From positions 1 through 5,922 of the forward strand of contig RQSC01001014.1 of assembly GCA_013416795.1 (NCBI GenBank): 5,922 bases of DNA, given 5' to 3'. This document shows positions 735 to 5,922 of this stretch, one piece after another (position 1 is the stretch's first letter; each line of letters begins with the position of its first letter). This DNA comes from Prasinococcaceae sp. CCMP 1430. Its lineage: Eukaryota; Plantae; Prasinodermophyta. The position numbers and the translations under genes are program-made. The notes beneath the pieces are model-generated. The model made no database searches and was not told the DNA's origin. It saw only the letters and a list, made by a program, of their open reading frames with translations.

Positions 735-1597
735 TCACGCCGCACCGATGGCCTCCACGGCGCTCATGTACCACTCCCGCGGTAGGTCAGCTTCTTCTCG
801 CCGCGTGTGGTTGAAGGGTTCGCGCAGAATTCCCTCCGCGTGAAGTGCGGCCAGCCGCGCGAACTCTGCGCCCGGATCCTTGCCCGTGCGCTCGCAGAGC
901 CACGTAAACCACACCACGCCGGCCTTGACGTGCGGGACCTCCTCGTCGGAAATGCGCTGAACGATAGCCGCCGACTCCTTGTCGCCCGCGCCGACGAGGC
1001 GCGCCGCCAAGCGGTCGCCGTGGTCAAGCCCACGAGCCTCCTGAATCATCGGGACAACGACCAGCCGTGCTCCCAGGTCGCCCACGGTCCCCTGTGCAGC
1101 TTCCCACAGCCCATCGTGTGCCGGCATGTCGCCATAGGAATGCCCCAGGGCCTCGATGCGATCGAGGCACCACTCGAGGTGCCTTGCCTCGTCATCCGCA
1201 ATTTGCGCGAACGTCTCGAAGAACGCCGGCGGGAGCGGCTCCGGGGCCCCCGCAGCTGCTGCCGTATCGGCGCACGAGAAGCGCACGACCGTGTCCCACG
1301 CAAGGTTGACCGCATTGAGCTCAATAGACGCCAGGTTGTGCAGGAGGAATGCCGAGAGCGGCAGGCCCGATTGGCGCTGGCCGGGCATCTCCTTCTGCGG
1401 CACCAGCACGGGGCGCGCGGGGCGCGCAGGGCGCACTGGCGCGCTCGCCACGCCCACACCCCCGCCTGACGCGCCGGCTGCAACCACCGCCGCGAACGCC
1501 TCGCGCGTAAGCGCCACTTTTTCCCGGGGGCACTCCGCCCTGAGCACCCGCGCGGCGAGCTCCGCTGCGGCAGGCGGCGCCACCGCCGCTCAGCCAT
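735..1597 (-). CDS. DUF455-family ferritin-like (putative diiron) protein, plant/green-algal type; 5' start unresolved
   Basis: Family motifs are RPARPARPVLV, LLHNLASIELNAVNLAWDTVVRF, ADDEARH, YGDMPAHDGLW, ARLVVVPMIQEARGLD, DEEVPHVKAGVVWF and PFNHTRREEADLPREWY. The four-helix ligand set E / ExxH / E / ExxH is intact. The stop is TGA at 737-735. The frame is closed upstream by TGA at 1592-1590, and the ATG at 1597 is 1 nt out of frame. Confidence 0.9.
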
Positions 1598-1610: not shown

Positions 1611-1722
1611 CTGCGACGCATCGCGCAGGGGCACGAGAGCGCGTCAGCGCGCGGGCAACGCGCTGGTGTGAGGCTGGGCCGCATCAAAGAATCGCCGCGC
1701 GCGCTTGTAGCTGGCAACGCAC
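1611..1722 (-). other. Candidate 112-nt spliceosomal intron in the 5' UTR of the DUF455 gene
   Basis: On the minus strand: donor GAG|GTGCGT at 1722, branch GCTGAC at 1648-1643 and acceptor CGCAG|G at 1611. These are the same signals as in the well-supported introns at 4478-4561 and 5253-5392. There is no transcript evidence. Confidence 0.5.
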
Positions 1723-1802
1723 CTCCACTACCTCTATCGCCTCCTACCGCGCCTCGAGTGTGCGCGCCTCCCGCTGCACCGCCGCCGCCCGCGCCGCCCC
1801 CC

Positions 1803-3359
1803 CTGCGCAGCCACTCGTCCGCGGCGAGTTCGGCGCGCGTCACGTTGAGCGTGCGCAGCGCNCGGCGGCGGGTGCTCCCGCGCGCGGCGGCGACGTTCGG
1901 CGACGTCGACCCGGCGGAGGAAGCGCGGCTTGCGGCGGAGATGGAGGCCGCGCAGGCGGGCGGGGTGCGCAAGATGGTGGAGGATCGCCTCGCCGAGCTG
2001 CGCGCGATGGGCGACAACAAGCTCCCAAGCGACATGTGGGCGAGCCTCGCGCCGTCCGCGTGCGGCACCGAGGCATACGGCAGCTGGCGTGCAGGACTCG
2101 GCGGGGCGTCGCGGGGAGGGCTCAAGCTGGTGTGCGAGGCGCCCGCTGGGGCAGACGTCGGCGACGTCCTGCTTTCCATCCCCGAGAGCGCATGCCTGGT
2201 GGAGCCTCGCGCTCCCCCGCCCGGCGCGCCCGACCTCCCGTGGGAATTGCGGCTCGCGCTGCGCTTGCTCGACTCCGCCATGGGTCAGGACCCGAGCGAG
2301 GCGGGATACGTGTGGGCGGCGTACGCGGGCGCGCTCCTCCCCGCGCCCGCGCAGCTGTCGCAGCCCAGCTGTCTCTCCGAGGGTCTCCTGAAGGAGTACC
2401 AAGAGGGCGAAGAGGCCGACGGCGTGACCGCTCGCGCGCGTACGCAGCAGGCACGCCTGCGCGAGGCGATGCCCGTGCTCTCGCCACCAGCGGGCGAGGA
2501 CTGCGGGCCGCTGCAATGGGCGCTCGCGTGCGTGCGCTCGCGCGCGTTCGCGTGCGGCGCCGGAGGAGCCACGGGTGGCGCTGTGAGCTTTGGCGACATG
2601 GGTGACCAGGCCGGTGCGGGGCTGGATTCCGACGACCGCGGCGCTCCCACCGACCGATTCGCTATGGTGCCGTTCCTGGACATTGCCAACCACGCGGACG
2701 ACGACCAGGACCTCAACGCCGACTTCAGTTTCGAGGCGCTGCCGAACGCGGCTGGAGAAGTCAGCAGCGAGGGCGAGGCAGCTCCCAACTTCATGATGGA
2801 CCCGAGCGCCGCAGCGGGCGGCGCCGCCGACGGCGGCGAGCCCACCATGGGCTTTGTGCTGCGCGCAGTGCGCCCCATTGCACAAGGTGAAGAGGTACGG
2901 ATCAAGTACCACAGTGGCATGGACAACAAACGGCTCATGGCGGCCTACGGCTACTGCCTTGAGGGCAACGAGCTCGACCGCATGCCCCTGCCCCTGCCAC
3001 CGGCGGCCGCGCGCGCCGCGCGCGCGGCTGCGGACGCCGCACGGGAACGCGCTCTGGATGCAGGCGACGCCGCGGCTGCTCGCCGCGCGATGGCGCTGGG
3101 CGCCTCGGTGCAAGACACGGGCGCCGACTTGGGTGCCGGAGAGGACACCTCGACGTTGCTGCTGGAGCTCGCGCTGGCGCTGCTGGAGGACCTGCGCTCG
3201 CTCCCGACCAGCGCGGACGAGGACGACGCCATGCTCGCAAGCGCCCCGCTCGCGCCGCCGCTGCGCGCCGCGGTGGCCTACCGCGCCGAGCGCAAGCGCC
3301 TCGGCAGGCAGCTCGCGGACGTGCTCATGGCCGCCGCTGACCTCGTCGATGCCAAGTAA
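1803..3359 (+). CDS. SET-domain protein lysine methyltransferase, Rubisco LSMT-like family, with a probable plastid transit peptide; start unresolved
   Basis: SET-N is GLKLVCEAPAGADVGDVLLSIPESACL, followed by an iSET-like LALRLL...WAAYAGALLP segment. Core motifs are LQWALACVRSRAF, MVPFLDIANH and RAVRPIAQGEEVRIKY...DNKRLMAAYGY. The tail LPTSADEDDAML...AAVAYRAERKRL is typical of the LSMT substrate-binding region. The stop is TAA at 3357-3359. The first in-frame ATG is 1941, but a Ser/Arg/Ala-rich transit-peptide-like stretch precedes it from about 1803. Confidence 0.88.
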   Translation: MRSHSSAASSARVTLSVRSXRRRVLPRAAATFGDVDPAEEARLAAEMEAAQAGGVRKMVEDRLAELRAMGDNKLPSDMWASLAPSACGTEAYGSWRAGLGGASRGGLKLVCEAPAGADVGDVLLSIPESACLVEPRAPPPGAPDLPWELRLALRLLDSAMGQDPSEAGYVWAAYAGALLPAPAQLSQPSCLSEGLLKEYQEGEEADGVTARARTQQARLREAMPVLSPPAGEDCGPLQWALACVRSRAFACGAGGATGGAVSFGDMGDQAGAGLDSDDRGAPTDRFAMVPFLDIANHADDDQDLNADFSFEALPNAAGEVSSEGEAAPNFMMDPSAAAGGAADGGEPTMGFVLRAVRPIAQGEEVRIKYHSGMDNKRLMAAYGYCLEGNELDRMPLPLPPAAARAARAAADAARERALDAGDAAAARRAMALGASVQDTGADLGAGEDTSTLLLELALALLEDLRSLPTSADEDDAMLASAPLAPPLRAAVAYRAERKRLGRQLADVLMAAADLVDAK

Positions 3360-3760
3360 TACACGTGTCCTTCGTGTCGCCGGAATTCGCCCCTTCGGAC
3401 ATACGTTCGTTTCGAAATCAAACATACCCACGGCGGAGCGCATTCATCATCATTGATCATTGGGAATGCGTTCGTATCAATCTGCCTGCAATTTCTGCGT
3501 GTCCACACATGGCGCCACGTCATCGTCATCCACGAAGGGGTGCATACGGGGGAAAAGCGCGCGCCTGGTGCTGGCGCGCGCGCGCGGGGTGCGGGGTGGC
3601 GACGCGCGGGGTCGGCGCCACTCTGCGGGACGAGCGGGCTGGCGCGGCCTTGCTCGGGAGCGCGCGTAGAAGCGGGCAATGTCGTCTGCCAGCGCGCGCG
3701 CGCGCCTACGCGGCCGGCCTCACCGGCGGACCGGGGGGGGGCGTTCGGTGCGCGCGCTCC

Positions 3761-4825
3761 ATGGGCGCAGCCGCCGGGGAGGAGCTGTTGGTGCGCCTGG
3801 CTGCGGCGGAGAAGGCGGTGGAAGCGGGTGAATCCAAGCGCGCCGAGGACGCGCTCATGCTGCTCTCCAAGTCCACACCTGCGGCCAAGTGGCTCGCATC
3901 GACCAAGGCGGCGCACCGCGTCAAAGCGCTCAAGCGGCACTCCCGCTCGACGCCTGCCGTGCGCGGCGCGTGCGTCAAGGTCGTCGACGCGTGGCGGGCC
4001 GCCGTGACGGCCGAGGCAGCGAGTGCTAAGGAGGCCAAGGCAGGGGCTGCGAAGTCAAACAAGAGCGCGCCCGTCGCGTCGGCGGCGGCCGCTGACAAGT
4101 ACACCTCAGACCGCCTGCGCGTGTTGGAGCAAGTGTACACCAACCGCAACAACGGCGGCTTCCGCGATGCCATGACGAAGGTGCTCAAGAGCAAGTTGTG
4201 CAAGTCGGAGAGCGACTACAAAGTCGGTGACACCGTGCGCGTGGTCGACCGCATGCAGCGCGGCACTTATAGCTACAAGCTGAGCGCCCCAATCGGCCAG
4301 GACTTCGCACCGGGTTTCGAGCCGCTCTACTCACCCGCGGAGATGCTTGCGCTCGGCGTCTTCGAAGGCAAGTACTACAACGACGGGTTGTTCGAGCTCC
4401 CACGCGAGTGGTTCGAGGGGGCCATTGCGGCGCGCAAACTCGGACGCACGCCCAGCGTCACGCACAACGCCATGAAGGTGCGTGCGCGTTGCGCGCTGCG
4501 CGCCCACCTGACTGGCGCCTCGAAGGTCTGCGCACTGACCTCCCTGCTCGTTCGCTTCCAGGCCAAGTCGCGCCAGCCCCTTCACGTGTGGAACGAGAAC
4601 GGCTGGCTGCACAAAGACGACCCGCGCGGCTGGTTCCAGTGGTACTGTAGGTACTACCTCGGACGGCGCTGTCCCAAGGAGGACGCACGGCAGATCGGCC
4701 GCTGGCGCTCGTTCGGACCCCGCCACTCGGGGCAGATCAGAGCCAACTGCAAGCCGGGTGACTGCACGTGTCGGCCAAGGCAGCGGCAGGGCCTGCTGCA
4801 GTGGAGCTACGAGTACGACCTGTGA
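3761..4825 (+). CDS. Two-exon gene (3761-4477, 4562-4825; 326 aa): TFIIS N-terminal-like helical domain fused to an uncharacterised DPRGWFQWYCRY-family domain
   Basis: The ATG at 3761 (CCATGG) begins a coding-like sequence. Residues about 7-82 (LMLLSKS...WLASTKAAHRVKALKRH...VRGACVKVVDAWRAAV) fit the TFIIS-N/Med26-N pattern L..L..(8)..L..T.(I)G..V..L+KH...(v)...A..(l)v..W+..V. The region 4217-4822 carries DRMQRG.YSYKL.AP.G, SPAEMLALGVFEGKY, GW....DPRGWFQWYCRYYLGRR...D.RQI.RW and C.PGD..CRPRQRQ.LLQW. The stop is TGA at 4823-4825. Confidence 0.85.
   Translation: MGAAAGEELLVRLAAAEKAVEAGESKRAEDALMLLSKSTPAAKWLASTKAAHRVKALKRHSRSTPAVRGACVKVVDAWRAAVTAEAASAKEAKAGAAKSNKSAPVASAAAADKYTSDRLRVLEQVYTNRNNGGFRDAMTKVLKSKLCKSESDYKVGDTVRVVDRMQRGTYSYKLSAPIGQDFAPGFEPLYSPAEMLALGVFEGKYYNDGLFELPREWFEGAIAARKLGRTPSVTHNAMKVRARCALRAHLTGASKVCALTSLLVRFQAKSRQPLHVWNENGWLHKDDPRGWFQWYCRYYLGRRCPKEDARQIGRWRSFGPRHSGQIRANCKPGDCTCRPRQRQGLLQWSYEYDL
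4478..4561 (+). other. 84-nt GT-AG intron (phase 0, in frame, no stop codon)
   Basis: Donor AAG|GTGCGT, branch ACTGAC at 4534-4539, pyrimidine tract CTCCCTGCTCGTTCGCTTCCAG|G. Removing it joins NAMK to AKSRQPL and deletes 28 non-conserved-looking codons. Confidence 0.85.
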
Positions 4826-4911
4826 GCCATCGACCGCAGTCCAAAAGACGCTCTTTATAAGTTGCGCGCTCTCCGCTTGCTCTCGCAACCTTCCGACGTG
4901 TGTGCGCACTC

Positions 4912-5922
4912 TTAGAAGCCACTATCGGGCCCGCCCCGGGGTTGGCGCCGCGACCGCGCCTGTCAGCGCCGCGCATGCGCTTAGGTGCGCAGCGTCGCCA
5001 GGAAACACTCAGGCCAGGGCGCACGCGCTGAAGGCAGCGCGAGCAAAACATCGAGCTGAAACAGTCGACAGGCGTGGCGTCACCGGTCCGCGGCGCTGAC
5101 AGCACGTACATGAGGTCATCATCGCAGCCGATGCCAAACTCTTCACACTCGGAGTCGAGGTCAACCTCGCCGGTGCTGGCGCCGTACCGCTGTCCGAGCG
5201 CGCCGGGCTGAACAGGCGGCCGGCGGCCGGCAACGCCACTGGCGTAGAATTCCTGCATGGGGCGGACGGGCGCGTCGGGTGCGCGCCCCCATGCGCCGTC
5301 AGCACCGGCGCGCTCTGCCGGGCGTGTTTCGTGCCGAAACGTGCGCACGCCAGCCACGCGCTCGCACGCGCCCGCACGCTGCGCCTTCGCACCTTGATGT
5401 CGAGCTCGTCCATGCCGTTCTTCTGAAGTGCTGCCTCAAGGTCTTTCGAGCGCACCATCGGTATGCTGATGGTGATCTCACCCTCTCCCGGCGGGATTTC
5501 GGGCGCGAATGCGAGCTTGCCCGTGCCGCAGACGTTGGCACTGCTCTTGCACTTGTCCACCGCGCCCTCACCGCGCGAGTCGAAGACGGTGCCGTACACG
5601 TCCGCCTTGTACAGCGGGCCCTTGGACGGATTAGAAGTGTGCGCGGTGATGTACAGGCAGCGCTGCTCGATCTCGCCAGTGAACTGCGAGCTCATGCCTG
5701 ACACGCCACCGCCCAGGGAGGCGACGTTGTCGGGGCCCTTGTTGTCGCACTCCCCGATGACAGCGCGCAGGTCGGTCATCGCGACCTTCGTGTCCGCGAG
5801 CGCGGCGGGCGCGCCCGCCAGCGCGAGCGACGCGGCGAGGGCGAACGACGCGGACGCCGCGCCGAACCGCGCCAGCGCGCCGCCGTCTTCGGCCGCCACC
5901 CTCTCCTCCCTCACGCGCGCGC
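4912..5922 (-). CDS. 5'-partial predicted thylakoid-lumen protein resembling a cyanobacterial hypothetical family (exons >5922-5393, 5252-5110, probably 4921-4912)
   Basis: The frame is open to the window edge. A hydrophobic signal ASFALAASLALAGAPAALA ends in A-x-A, and the mature protein starts DTKV at 5794. The core C...CLYITAHTSNPSKGPLYKADVYGTVFD...EIPPGEGEITISIP...LDIK|EFYASG resembles, from memory, cyanobacterial C...C(F)(I)I.G...N.(S).K....AD(V)(F)G.(I)YD...E(V)PPG...(F).(I).(I)...L.LK.F.ASG proteins. The 3' exon choice is inferred. Confidence 0.75.
4922..5109 (-). other. Candidate 188-nt terminal intron of the lumenal-protein gene
   Basis: Donor AT|GTACGT at 5109 and branch GCTGAC at 4967-4962. 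The first usable AG downstream is at 4923-4922, giving ...CDDDLIGF* (TAA 4914-4912). Alternative acceptors exist at 5056 and 5028. Confidence 0.5.
5253..5392 (-). other. 140-nt GT-AG intron (phase 0)
   Basis: Donor AAG|GTGCGA at 5392, branch GCTGAC at 5303-5298, acceptor ATGCAG|G at 5253. Splicing switches ORF frames and gives LDIK-EFYASG, which completes the family motif. Confidence 0.88.

What the first reader, a model, noticed from the sequence alone, without database searches (positions are those of the whole stretch)
3761..4825. TFIIS N-terminal-like domain fused to an orphan, widely conserved DPRGWFQWYCRY domain
Seen: an N-terminal helical segment (about 3779-4006) with the TFIIS-N pattern, an Ala/Lys linker, and then a roughly 170-aa aromatic/Arg-rich domain with a C-terminal C.PGD.(T)C cluster. 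Established: TFIIS N-terminal domains (TFIIS, Elongin A, MED26, IWS1) are docking modules for short acidic motifs in the RNA polymerase II elongation machinery. As far as I recall, the C-terminal family has no assigned function and usually occurs alone. Inference: the fusion would tether an unknown, probably nucleic-acid-acting fold to transcribing Pol II or chromatin, giving a 'Rosetta stone' hint for the family (transcription-coupled repair or RNA/DNA modification are guesses). I do not know of this architecture being described, but I cannot search.
Basis: partly seen in the sequence, partly recalled or inferred. Interest (0 to 1): 0.75.

Follow-up and report, generated by a model that had tools for sequence, protein, structure and literature searches.

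The report
Pol II docking domain fused to orphan stress-linked domain
A marine green alga has a real two-exon gene that joins a docking module of the RNA polymerase II elongation machinery to a very widespread, highly conserved domain of unknown function and apparently unsolved fold, which in bacteria sits in light and singlet-oxygen stress gene clusters.

Summary
Window 3761-4825 (+) is one gene. Residues 31-82 match Pfam PF08711 (TFIIS-N) above its curated cut-off. In a model of a 59%-identical ortholog this part superposes on the Arabidopsis TFIIS LW domain (Z 12.3, rmsd 1.2 A).

The C-terminal domain (about 175 aa, plus two N-terminal helices) has no Pfam, NCBIfam, PHROG, PADLOC or PDB-sequence match. 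A confident model (pLDDT 94, pTM 0.91) finds nothing in the PDB (best Z 2.5).

One correction: 4478-4561 is an in-frame 84-nt GT-AG intron, so the product is 326 aa, not 354.

A full-length poly(A) cDNA contig of an ortholog carries both domains in one ORF. The fusion is rare: I found four ortholog clusters, all marine and monophyletic.

The domain itself is huge: over 7,700 protein clusters, in Alphaproteobacteria, CPR bacteria, giant viruses, jumbo phages, streptophytes and fungi.

New here: in 25 of 80 bacterial loci the gene lies next to TspO or to the rpoE-chrR singlet-oxygen cluster, often behind sigmaE-type promoters. Other eukaryotic members carry NLS-rich disordered N-termini.

Best reading: a photo-oxidative-stress activity brought to transcribing Pol II. 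Its biochemistry is still unknown.

The parts
3761..4477 (+). Exon 1 (239 codons): start codon, TND, linker, two-helix extension and first half of the orphan domain
   Evidence: The ATG at 3761 aligns with the start of ortholog P0002, whose cDNA has in-frame stops upstream of its ATG. In a 97%-identical Tara allele, frame-breaking indels lie upstream of 3761 and none lies in this exon.
3779..4036 (+). TFIIS N-terminal domain (TND / LW domain), about residues 7-92, with the Leu...Trp signature (ALKRH ... DAWR) and a basic surface (pI about 10)
   Evidence: PF08711 at 22-24.9 bits against a cut-off of 20.6. Ortholog model against A. thaliana TFIIS LW domain 8h6r: Z 12.3, rmsd 1.2 A, 77 aa, 26% identity. 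The next hits are yeast LW, HRP2 IBD and MED26 TND. pI.
4037..4093 (+). Ala/Lys/Ser-rich disordered linker
   Evidence: The matching segment of the ortholog model has pLDDT below 50 (residues 96-108). Two of the four non-synonymous allele differences fall here.
4094..4210 (+). Two-helix N-terminal extension of the orphan domain. It is shared with other eukaryotic and giant-virus members and is absent from most bacterial ones.
   Evidence: Helices 114-127 and 132-145 in the ortholog model. ESM-Atlas giant-virus clusters align over residues 108-327 at TM 0.87. Alignment.
4211..4477 (+). Orphan domain core, first part (DRMQ.G.YSY ... GVFEGKY.ND ... N)
   Evidence: Alignment A1, invariant columns. 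All 5 allele substitutions here are synonymous.
4478..4561 (+). Phase-0, in-frame intron of 84 nt (GTGCGT ... pyrimidine tract ... CAG)
   Evidence: The 28-aa insert is unique to the window among 56 aligned homologs. The only indel inside the ORF in the Tara allele L011 is a 7-nt insertion at 4488/4489, which would shift the frame if this stretch were coding. That read-through gives the truncated P0003. Boundaries.
4562..4825 (+). Exon 2 (87 codons plus stop): KSRQ, DPRGWFQWYCRYYLGRR, D..QI.RW, RH, NC.PGD..CRPRQRQ.LLQW
   Evidence: Most of the invariant columns of the family lie here. pI 9.8.

Best explanation
SHOWN.
- The window holds one intact two-exon nuclear gene of a GC-rich marine green alga. 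It encodes a 326-aa protein.
- The protein starts with a bona fide TFIIS N-terminal domain (TND), followed by a disordered linker.
- The rest is a domain of a very large, strongly conserved family that has no name and no detectable structural relative in the PDB.
- The same architecture occurs in at least three other marine algal lineages. In one of them it lies on a single capped, polyadenylated mRNA.
- In bacteria the stand-alone domain is repeatedly encoded next to, or fused to, TspO.
- It also lies inside or beside the rpoE-chrR / UfaD-UfaO-CFA-synthase / SDR / fasciclin cluster, the singlet-oxygen (sigmaE-ChrR) stress regulon. There it is often in the same transcription direction behind TGATCC-N16-CGTA promoters.
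- Other recurrent neighbours are SOUL heme-binding protein and MsrA.

INFERRED.
- The domain carries out a protective or repair activity needed under light and photo-oxidative stress.
- In eukaryotes it works in the nucleus. Streptophyte, fungal, Kipferlia and Rhodelphis members carry NLS-rich disordered N-termini.
- In this algal clade the TND replaces those tails. It would dock the domain, through acidic TND-interacting motifs of factors such as IWS1, SPT6 or LEO1, onto elongating RNA polymerase II.
- The activity would then be delivered to transcribed chromatin or nascent RNA, for example to deal with singlet-oxygen or UV damage met during transcription.
- The chemical reaction or ligand is not known.
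For: Gene and fusion:
- Open frame.
- PF08711 above its cut-off, and TND fold at Z 12.3.
- Orthologs P0002 and P0004 have the same architecture, and P0005 has it with a truncated gene call.
- L001 is a cDNA with a SMART-type 5' adaptor, in-frame stops in its 5' UTR, one 327-aa ORF and a poly(A) tail.
- Against a 97.2%-identical Tara allele the exons differ by 10 synonymous and 4 non-synonymous changes. All frame-breaking indels lie in the intron or upstream of the ATG.
- The four fused proteins are monophyletic (SH-aLRT 98-99).

Orphan fold:
- Domain model has pLDDT 94.4 and pTM 0.91.
- Best Foldseek E against the PDB is 2.6. Best VIA-align Z over 48,161 chains is 2.5.

Stress link:
- Among 80 genome loci, TspO is directly upstream on the same strand in 13.
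- The rpoE-chrR plus amine oxidase-DUF1365-CMAS (+SDR, fasciclin) cluster is adjacent in about 9.
- 25 of 80 loci have at least one marker.
- SigmaE-type promoters lie upstream in the same orientation in L045, L049, L050, L054, L065, L067, L080 and L083.
- SOUL, MsrA and a flavodoxin-like reductase recur as neighbours.
- TspO fusions exist.
- In a Sinorhizobium medicae plasmid the order is fasciclin-DUF378-TspO-family gene, with a 4-nt overlap.
- The regulon is identified from PMC7380195, PMC5507510 and PMC7074977.

Nuclear tails: sequences.

TND function: PMC9987994.
Against:
- No biochemical clue. There is no fold relative, no obvious metal site, and the Cys pair is lost in fungi, Rhodelphis and Calypogeia.
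- 55 of 80 bacterial loci show none of the stress markers.
- No sigmaE motif lies within 300 nt upstream of the gene itself.
- Gene context in bacteria need not transfer to a eukaryotic nuclear protein.
- TspO and SOUL point to tetrapyrroles at least as much as to nucleic acids.
- The TND's binding partners are untested.
Confidence: 0.45

Rival explanations
1. The orphan domain is a tetrapyrrole (heme or protoporphyrin) binding or processing module. In the alga the TND fusion couples tetrapyrrole status to Pol II elongation, as a nuclear effector of tetrapyrrole (plastid-to-nucleus) signalling rather than a repair factor.
For: - The most frequent bacterial partner is TspO, a tetrapyrrole-binding membrane protein. 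It is directly upstream in 13 of 80 loci, and three fused clusters exist.
- SOUL heme-binding protein is directly upstream in 5 loci.
- In Aliiroseovarius the gene follows hemF and lies near hemC and hemE.
- The domain is rich in invariant Trp/Tyr/Phe and Arg, plus a conserved His.
Against: - No similarity to any known heme or porphyrin binding fold.
- The candidate axial ligands (His, Cys) are lost in fungal members.
- The domain is present in jumbo phages, giant viruses and CPR bacteria, and occurs fused to an HNH endonuclease. A porphyrin role is not obvious in those settings.
Confidence: 0.2
2. The domain is a nucleic-acid enzyme of mobile elements and viruses (DNA or RNA modification, or a counter-defence function). 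The alga domesticated it from a giant virus. The bacterial stress-cluster context would then be incidental.
For: - 284 IMG/VR contigs carry it, mostly giant-virus MAGs.
- The nearest ESM-Atlas structures are Nucleocytoviricota proteins at TM 0.87.
- Jumbo phages carry it, including Yersinia phage YerA41.
- HNH_3 and DUF5872 fusions exist.
- The algal clade groups with eukaryote and giant-virus sequences.
Against: - The TND clade is not nested inside the viral clade.
- There is no PADLOC hit for the domain.
- Bacterial copies are single chromosomal genes in housekeeping or stress neighbourhoods, not defence islands.
- Identity across CPR bacteria, Alphaproteobacteria and algae is 55-60%, which argues for a conserved cellular substrate.
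Confidence: 0.15
3. The apparent fusion is an artefact: two adjacent genes, or a mis-assembled contig, read as one frame.
For: The window's frame stays open through an intron and upstream of the ATG, which shows that GC-rich DNA gives long spurious open frames. No RNA data for this alga could be obtained.
Against: - The same architecture lies on an independent poly(A) cDNA contig and a second transcript contig.
- Four independent Tara assemblies reproduce the locus.
- Only a 20-aa disordered linker separates the domains, with no stop and no start context between them.
- Both halves show a pattern of purifying selection.
Confidence: 0.03

Closest known systems
TFIIS N-terminal domain (TND / LW domain / IBD; Pfam PF08711) proteins: TFIIS, Elongin A, MED26, IWS1, PNUTS, LEDGF/HRP2
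   Same: The N-terminal 90 residues have the same five-helix bundle, the Leu/Trp signature and a basic surface. The best structural match is plant TFIIS itself.
   Different: None of the described TND proteins reviewed in PMC9987994 carries this C-terminal domain. TFIIS domains II and III (the zinc ribbon) are absent. TIGR01385 matches only its N-terminal part, at 25 bits against a cut-off of 237.
Stand-alone bacterial 'hypothetical proteins' of about 169 aa (e.g. Aliiroseovarius crassostreae K3X48_11620; Sinorhizobium medicae U8C40_35935, downstream of tspO)
   Same: 55-65% identical over the whole core, with all invariant motifs shared.
   Different: They have no TND, no linker and mostly no two-helix extension. 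They are cytoplasmic bacterial proteins encoded in TspO or sigmaE-ChrR neighbourhoods.
SigmaE-ChrR singlet-oxygen regulon of Rhodobacter sphaeroides (rpoE-chrR, RSP1087-1091 including UfaD/UfaO, cfaS/ufaM, phrA, fasciclin RSP_1409)
   Same: The family gene is embedded among homologs of these genes and sits behind the same promoter motif in several Alphaproteobacteria.
   Different: The family is not one of the published core members. RSP1088, the one small hypothetical protein in the operon, corresponds to a lipoprotein in P. syringae and is not this family. Regulation was not measured here.
Giant-virus (Nucleocytoviricota) 221-aa hypothetical proteins
   Same: Same domain including the two-helix extension, at TM 0.87 over residues 108-327, with 45-54% identity.
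   Different: They have no TND. They are encoded in a conserved viral synteny block with DVNP, ThyX, ODC and RFC1.

Membership tests
TFIIS N-terminal domain (PF08711) | Sequence match to the Pfam model above the gathering score | tested here: met
   22.0 bits (whole protein) and 24.9 bits (residues 1-100) against a cut-off of 20.6. Orthologs P0002 and P0004 score just below it, at 18.7 and 17.4 bits.
TFIIS N-terminal domain (PF08711) | Right-handed five-helix bundle superposable on solved TNDs | tested here: met
   Ortholog model against 8h6r: Z 12.3, rmsd 1.2 A over 77 aa. Against 7faw: Z 11.7. Against 6t3i: Z 10.9. The Foldseek top hits are all TND, LW or IBD domains. The model is of ortholog P0002, not of the window's own sequence.
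TFIIS N-terminal domain (PF08711) | Binds acidic TND-interacting motifs via a basic patch and hydrophobic pockets | not testable with these tools
   The segment is basic (pI about 10), and the review defines the interface.
TFIIS proper (TIGR01385) | Domains II and III with the C-terminal zinc ribbon; full-length model score | tested here: not met
   25.5 bits against a cut-off of 237.1. Only model positions 2-136 match.
Orphan 'DPRGWFQWY' domain family (unnamed) | Shared invariant motifs DxMQ, GVFEGKY.ND, KSRQ, DPRGWFQWY.RY..GRR, D..QI.RW, RH, CRP.QRQ.L.QW | tested here: met
   E 2e-87 to 1e-56 against hundreds of members, with 51 invariant columns.
SigmaE-ChrR singlet-oxygen regulon | Gene transcribed from a TGATCC-N16-CGTA promoter and induced by singlet oxygen | tested here: inconclusive
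   The motif lies upstream of operons containing the gene in 8 loci. It is absent within -300 nt of the gene in all 80 loci. Induction was not measured. This applies to bacterial members only.
Class I SAM methyltransferases | Rossmann fold with motif I | tested here: not met
   The only PDB profile hit, 2p7h (E 0.014), is a short motif-I look-alike. The model is mainly helical and has no fold match.

The most novel reading that the evidence does not exclude
The orphan domain is a new-fold enzyme or sensor that belongs to the ancient cellular response to light-generated singlet oxygen and free tetrapyrroles. A clade of marine green algae has wired it directly to elongating RNA polymerase II through a TND. 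This would be either a previously unknown transcription-coupled system for photo-oxidative nucleic-acid damage, or a nuclear tetrapyrrole-responsive elongation regulator.
Probability: 0.3. Interest if true: 0.85.

Novelty: new variant of a known kind. Interest (0 to 1): 0.68.

Why it matters
- The C-terminal domain is one of the larger protein families still without a name, a Pfam model or a solved relative. It has more than 7,700 clusters at 90% identity. It is found in at least 600 bacterial species, in CPR bacteria, giant viruses, jumbo phages, streptophytes and fungi. Identity between bacteria and algae is about 55-60%.
- Two independent clues now make it testable. Bacterial gene context ties it to TspO and the sigmaE-ChrR singlet-oxygen response. 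Eukaryotic architectures (the TND here, NLS-rich tails elsewhere) place it in the nucleus, at transcribing Pol II.
- It also adds a TND partner of a new kind to the TND interactome, which so far consists of scaffold, chromatin-reader and phosphatase-targeting proteins.

Tried and rejected
- Pfam, NCBIfam, PHROGs and PADLOC scans of the C-domain found nothing.
- phmmer and a profile search against PDB sequences gave only 2p7h at E 0.014. I rejected it as a SAM motif-I look-alike.
- Foldseek against PDB and BFVD, and VIA-align wide on the domain-only model, gave no fold relative. The one BFVD hit is an unnamed viral family member.
- ESM-Atlas feature searches returned only the family's own unnamed clusters, and no named cluster.
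- I considered RSP1088 of the R. sphaeroides operon as a family member. I rejected it because its reported counterpart is a lipoprotein.
- A sigmaE promoter immediately upstream of the gene was found in 0 of 80 loci. The motifs lie further upstream, at operon starts.
- Several 'fusions' (DUF523+DUF1722, PolyA_pol, OsmC, AAA_33) match only fragments of the partner domains and may be gene-calling chimeras. I gave them no weight.
- Giant-virus synteny gave no functional clue.
- Literature searches found no description of the family.
- I did not submit a joined (spliced) protein of the window to any tool. The exons were searched by reference, and ortholog P0002 served as the intron-free proxy for folding.
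- I did not run the big representative search, because no claim here rests on the absence of relatives.

Full report
**1. The observation**

The + strand frame from 3761 to 4825 is open for 354 codons. Pfam PF08711 (TFIIS helical bundle, 'Med26') matches residues 31-82. It scores 22.0 bits in the whole protein and 24.9 bits in residues 1-100 alone. The curated cut-off is 20.6. NCBIfam TIGR01385 (TFIIS) matches only with its N-terminal third.

The rest of the protein has no hit in Pfam, NCBIfam, PHROGs or PADLOC. It has no hit among PDB sequences either.

**2. Gene model**

An alignment of 56 homologs shows a 28-residue insert found only in the window's read-through. It corresponds to 4478-4561. 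This stretch starts with GTGCGT, ends with a pyrimidine tract and CAG, and is 84 nt long, so it does not break the frame.

Four Tara Oceans metagenome assemblies carry a 97.2%-identical allele of window 1863-5922. The only indel inside the ORF in that allele is a 7-nt insertion at 4488/4489, inside this stretch. Every other indel lies upstream of the ATG at 3761, including a 1-nt deletion at 3733. So 4478-4561 is an intron and 3761 is the start. The longer database 'proteins' P0001 and P0003 are gene-caller read-throughs.

The exons are 3761-4477 and 4562-4825, and the product is 326 aa. Between the two alleles the exons differ by 10 synonymous and 4 non-synonymous changes. Two of the non-synonymous changes lie in the linker. 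That is the pattern of a gene under purifying selection.

They were searched by reference. The intron-free ortholog P0002 was used for folding.

**3. The fusion is real and conserved, but rare**

P0002 (327 aa) and P0004 (323 aa) have the same architecture at about 59-65% identity. P0005 (287 aa) also has it. Its gene call is truncated at the N-terminus, at what looks like an intron acceptor.

P0002 lies on contig L001. That contig starts with a SMART-type cDNA adaptor and has a 5' UTR with in-frame stops. It holds a single 327-aa ORF and ends in poly(A). So in an ortholog both domains are on one mRNA.

In two trees the four fused proteins form one clade (SH-aLRT 98 and 99). A search restricted to proteins of 267-850 aa found no other TND fusion among 71 long family members.

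The 65-76% GC fits, but I did not test that identification.

**4. The two domains as structures**

An AlphaFold2 model of P0002 has mean pLDDT 90.6. Its residues 8-93 superpose on solved TNDs as follows:

| PDB entry | Domain | Z | Detail |
|---|---|---|---|
| 8h6r | Arabidopsis TFIIS LW domain | 12.3 | rmsd 1.2 A, 77 aa, 26% identity |
| 7faw | Yeast LW domain | 11.7 | |
| 6t3i | HRP2 IBD | 10.9 | |
| 6zv3 | MED26 TND | 9.4 | |

Foldseek gives the same ranking. The window sequence keeps the Leu...Trp signature (ALKRH...DAWR) and is basic, with pI about 10. This fits the basic patch that reads acidic TND-interacting motifs (PMC9987994).

The C-terminal part was modelled alone (P0002:108-327). 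The model has pLDDT 94.4 and pTM 0.91. It consists of two N-terminal helices, a beta-hairpin and a mainly helical core. It has no counterpart in the PDB:
- The best Foldseek E-value is 2.6.
- The best VIA-align Z over 48,161 representative chains is 2.5.
- BFVD holds one unnamed viral relative.
- The nearest ESM-Atlas clusters are 221-aa Nucleocytoviricota hypothetical proteins, at TM 0.87 over residues 108-327.

On present evidence this is an unsolved and possibly new fold.

**5. How big the family is**

- The word search returned at least 7,751 clusters at E <= 1e-3. Most are about 169 aa, have no Pfam domain, and are named 'hypothetical protein' wherever a name exists.
The hits are mostly Alphaproteobacteria. 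There are also Gammaproteobacteria, Nitrospiraceae and CPR lineages (Saccharibacteria, Nomurabacteria, Gracilibacteria, WWE3).
- 284 IMG/VR contigs carry it, mostly giant-virus MAGs.
- Jumbo Vibrio phages, Yersinia phage YerA41, and Cobetia and Flavobacterium phages carry it.
- Rhizobial megaplasmids carry it.
- Eukaryotic members include Spirogloea, the liverwort Calypogeia, Kipferlia, Rhodelphis and three fungi.

Fifty-one alignment columns are invariant, many of them Arg, Trp, Gln, Asp or Glu. The Cys pair and the His are lost in fungi, and partly lost in Rhodelphis and Calypogeia. They are therefore not the universal core.

**6. What the family is associated with**

I called ORFs in the 80 bacterial loci, clustered them, and named the recurrent neighbours with Pfam.
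- TspO lies directly upstream on the same strand in 13 loci, including CPR, Nitrospiraceae, Rhizobium and Bradyrhizobium.
- In about nine loci the gene abuts rpoE-chrR together with an amine-oxidase-like gene, DUF1365, a CFA-synthase-like gene, an SDR and often a fasciclin gene.
- These are the homologs of the Rhodobacter sphaeroides sigmaE-ChrR singlet-oxygen regulon: UfaD, UfaO, cfaS/ufaM, RSP1087 and RSP_1409 (PMC7380195, PMC5507510, PMC7074977).
- In all, 25 of 80 loci carry at least one of these markers.
- SOUL heme-binding protein (5 loci, directly upstream), MsrA (4) and a flavodoxin-like reductase (4) also recur.

The sigmaE promoter consensus TGATCC-N16-CGTA is absent from the 300 nt before the gene. 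It does lie at the head of same-strand operons that contain the gene, in L045, L049, L050, L067 and L083 (rpoE-chrR-(fasciclin)-gene). It also lies before fasciclin-gene in L050, 465 nt upstream of the gene in L054, and upstream of TspO-gene in L065 and L080.

An annotated Sinorhizobium medicae plasmid shows the order fasciclin-DUF378-TspO-gene, with a 4-nt overlap between the last two. TspO-domain fusions exist.

RSP1088 of the published operon is not this family. Three other bacterial loci showed unrelated neighbours. The association is therefore frequent but not universal.

**7. Eukaryotic architectures**

Outside the TND clade, eukaryotic members have long disordered N-termini. These carry acidic runs and classical NLS-like motifs: KRKRED and PKRGKRKS in Calypogeia, PSKKRKVS in a Dothideomycete, and KRKKEGE in P0122. 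This points to a nuclear location, by inference from sequence only.

The TND in the algal clade sits at the same position as these tails. In the trees the TND clade groups with eukaryotic and giant-virus sequences at SH-aLRT 91-93. That support is below the star threshold. The clade is not nested within the viral clade.

**8. Interpretation**

Shown: a real, selected, two-exon gene that fuses a TND to an orphan domain of unsolved fold. The family is linked in bacteria to TspO and the singlet-oxygen stress cluster.

Inferred: the domain provides a protective or repair function under photo-oxidative stress, and in this alga the TND docks it on the Pol II elongation machinery.

Whether the substrate is damaged nucleic acid or a tetrapyrrole cannot be decided here.
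- For nucleic acid: nuclear tails, phage and giant-virus carriage, the HNH fusion, and a photolyase in the same regulon.
- For a tetrapyrrole: the TspO, SOUL and hemF neighbours.

I put 0.45 on the first composite reading and 0.2 on the tetrapyrrole-sensor variant.

**9. Comparison with what is known, and novelty**

The TND half is a member of a known family. The membership tests of sequence and fold were met. The C-terminal half belongs to no described family.

The review of TND proteins lists TFIIS, elongin, Mediator, IWS1, PNUTS and LEDGF/HRP2 among others. None of them has this partner.

I rate the finding a new variant of a known kind: a TND-tethered protein with a partner domain that is uncharacterised. 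The categorically new element, if any, would be that orphan domain.

Other notes of this scan report further unusual TND fusions in the same genome. I did not check them.

Noticed in passing
window 735-1583 (-): Intact 282-aa DUF455 (PF04305) ferritin-like protein, E 2e-78. It is an ordinary neighbour gene.
   Followed up: partly
window 1668-3359 (+): Long 563-codon open frame upstream of the gene, with an N (X in translation) near 1860 and no Pfam hit at E <= 0.01. Its C-terminal part looks SET/LSMT-like by eye only. The Tara allele differs from it only by substitutions, with no indel.
   Followed up: no
window 5009-5914 (-): 301-codon open frame converging on the gene's 3' end, with no Pfam hit. 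Only 6 substitutions and no indel against the Tara allele, so it is probably a real gene.
   Followed up: no
window 3365-3760 and P0001/P0003: Database 'proteins' of 421 and 324 aa are prokaryote-style read-throughs of the 5' UTR and of the intron. GC-rich algal DNA keeps spurious frames open.
   Followed up: yes
L056, L063, L073, L079, L089, L090, L080, L036 (genome loci): The TspO-linked copies of the family (CPR bacteria, Nitrospiraceae, Rhizobium, Nitrobacter) form their own well-supported clade (SH-aLRT 95-98). This suggests a TspO-partner subfamily that moves between phyla.
   Followed up: partly
L097-L176 (IMG/VR loci): In giant-virus contigs the family gene sits in a conserved block with a DUF2177 membrane protein (59 of 80 loci), DVNP (dinoflagellate/viral nucleoprotein), ThyX, ornithine decarboxylase and the RFC large subunit.
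   Followed up: partly
Yersinia phage YerA41 MW570730.1 28671-29183 (H5): The phage homolog is annotated 'structural protein'. If it is truly virion-associated, that would be an odd location for this domain.
   Followed up: no
P0183-P0185 (fungal members): Fungal members share an N-terminal motif, YE..R...I..N..L...LG(I/L), followed by K/R-rich tails. It has no Pfam match and I could not place it.
   Followed up: no
L003 7900-8000: The P0005 ortholog (Tara scaffold, 69% GC) begins at what looks like an intron acceptor inside the TND. Intron positions therefore differ between the algal orthologs.
   Followed up: partly
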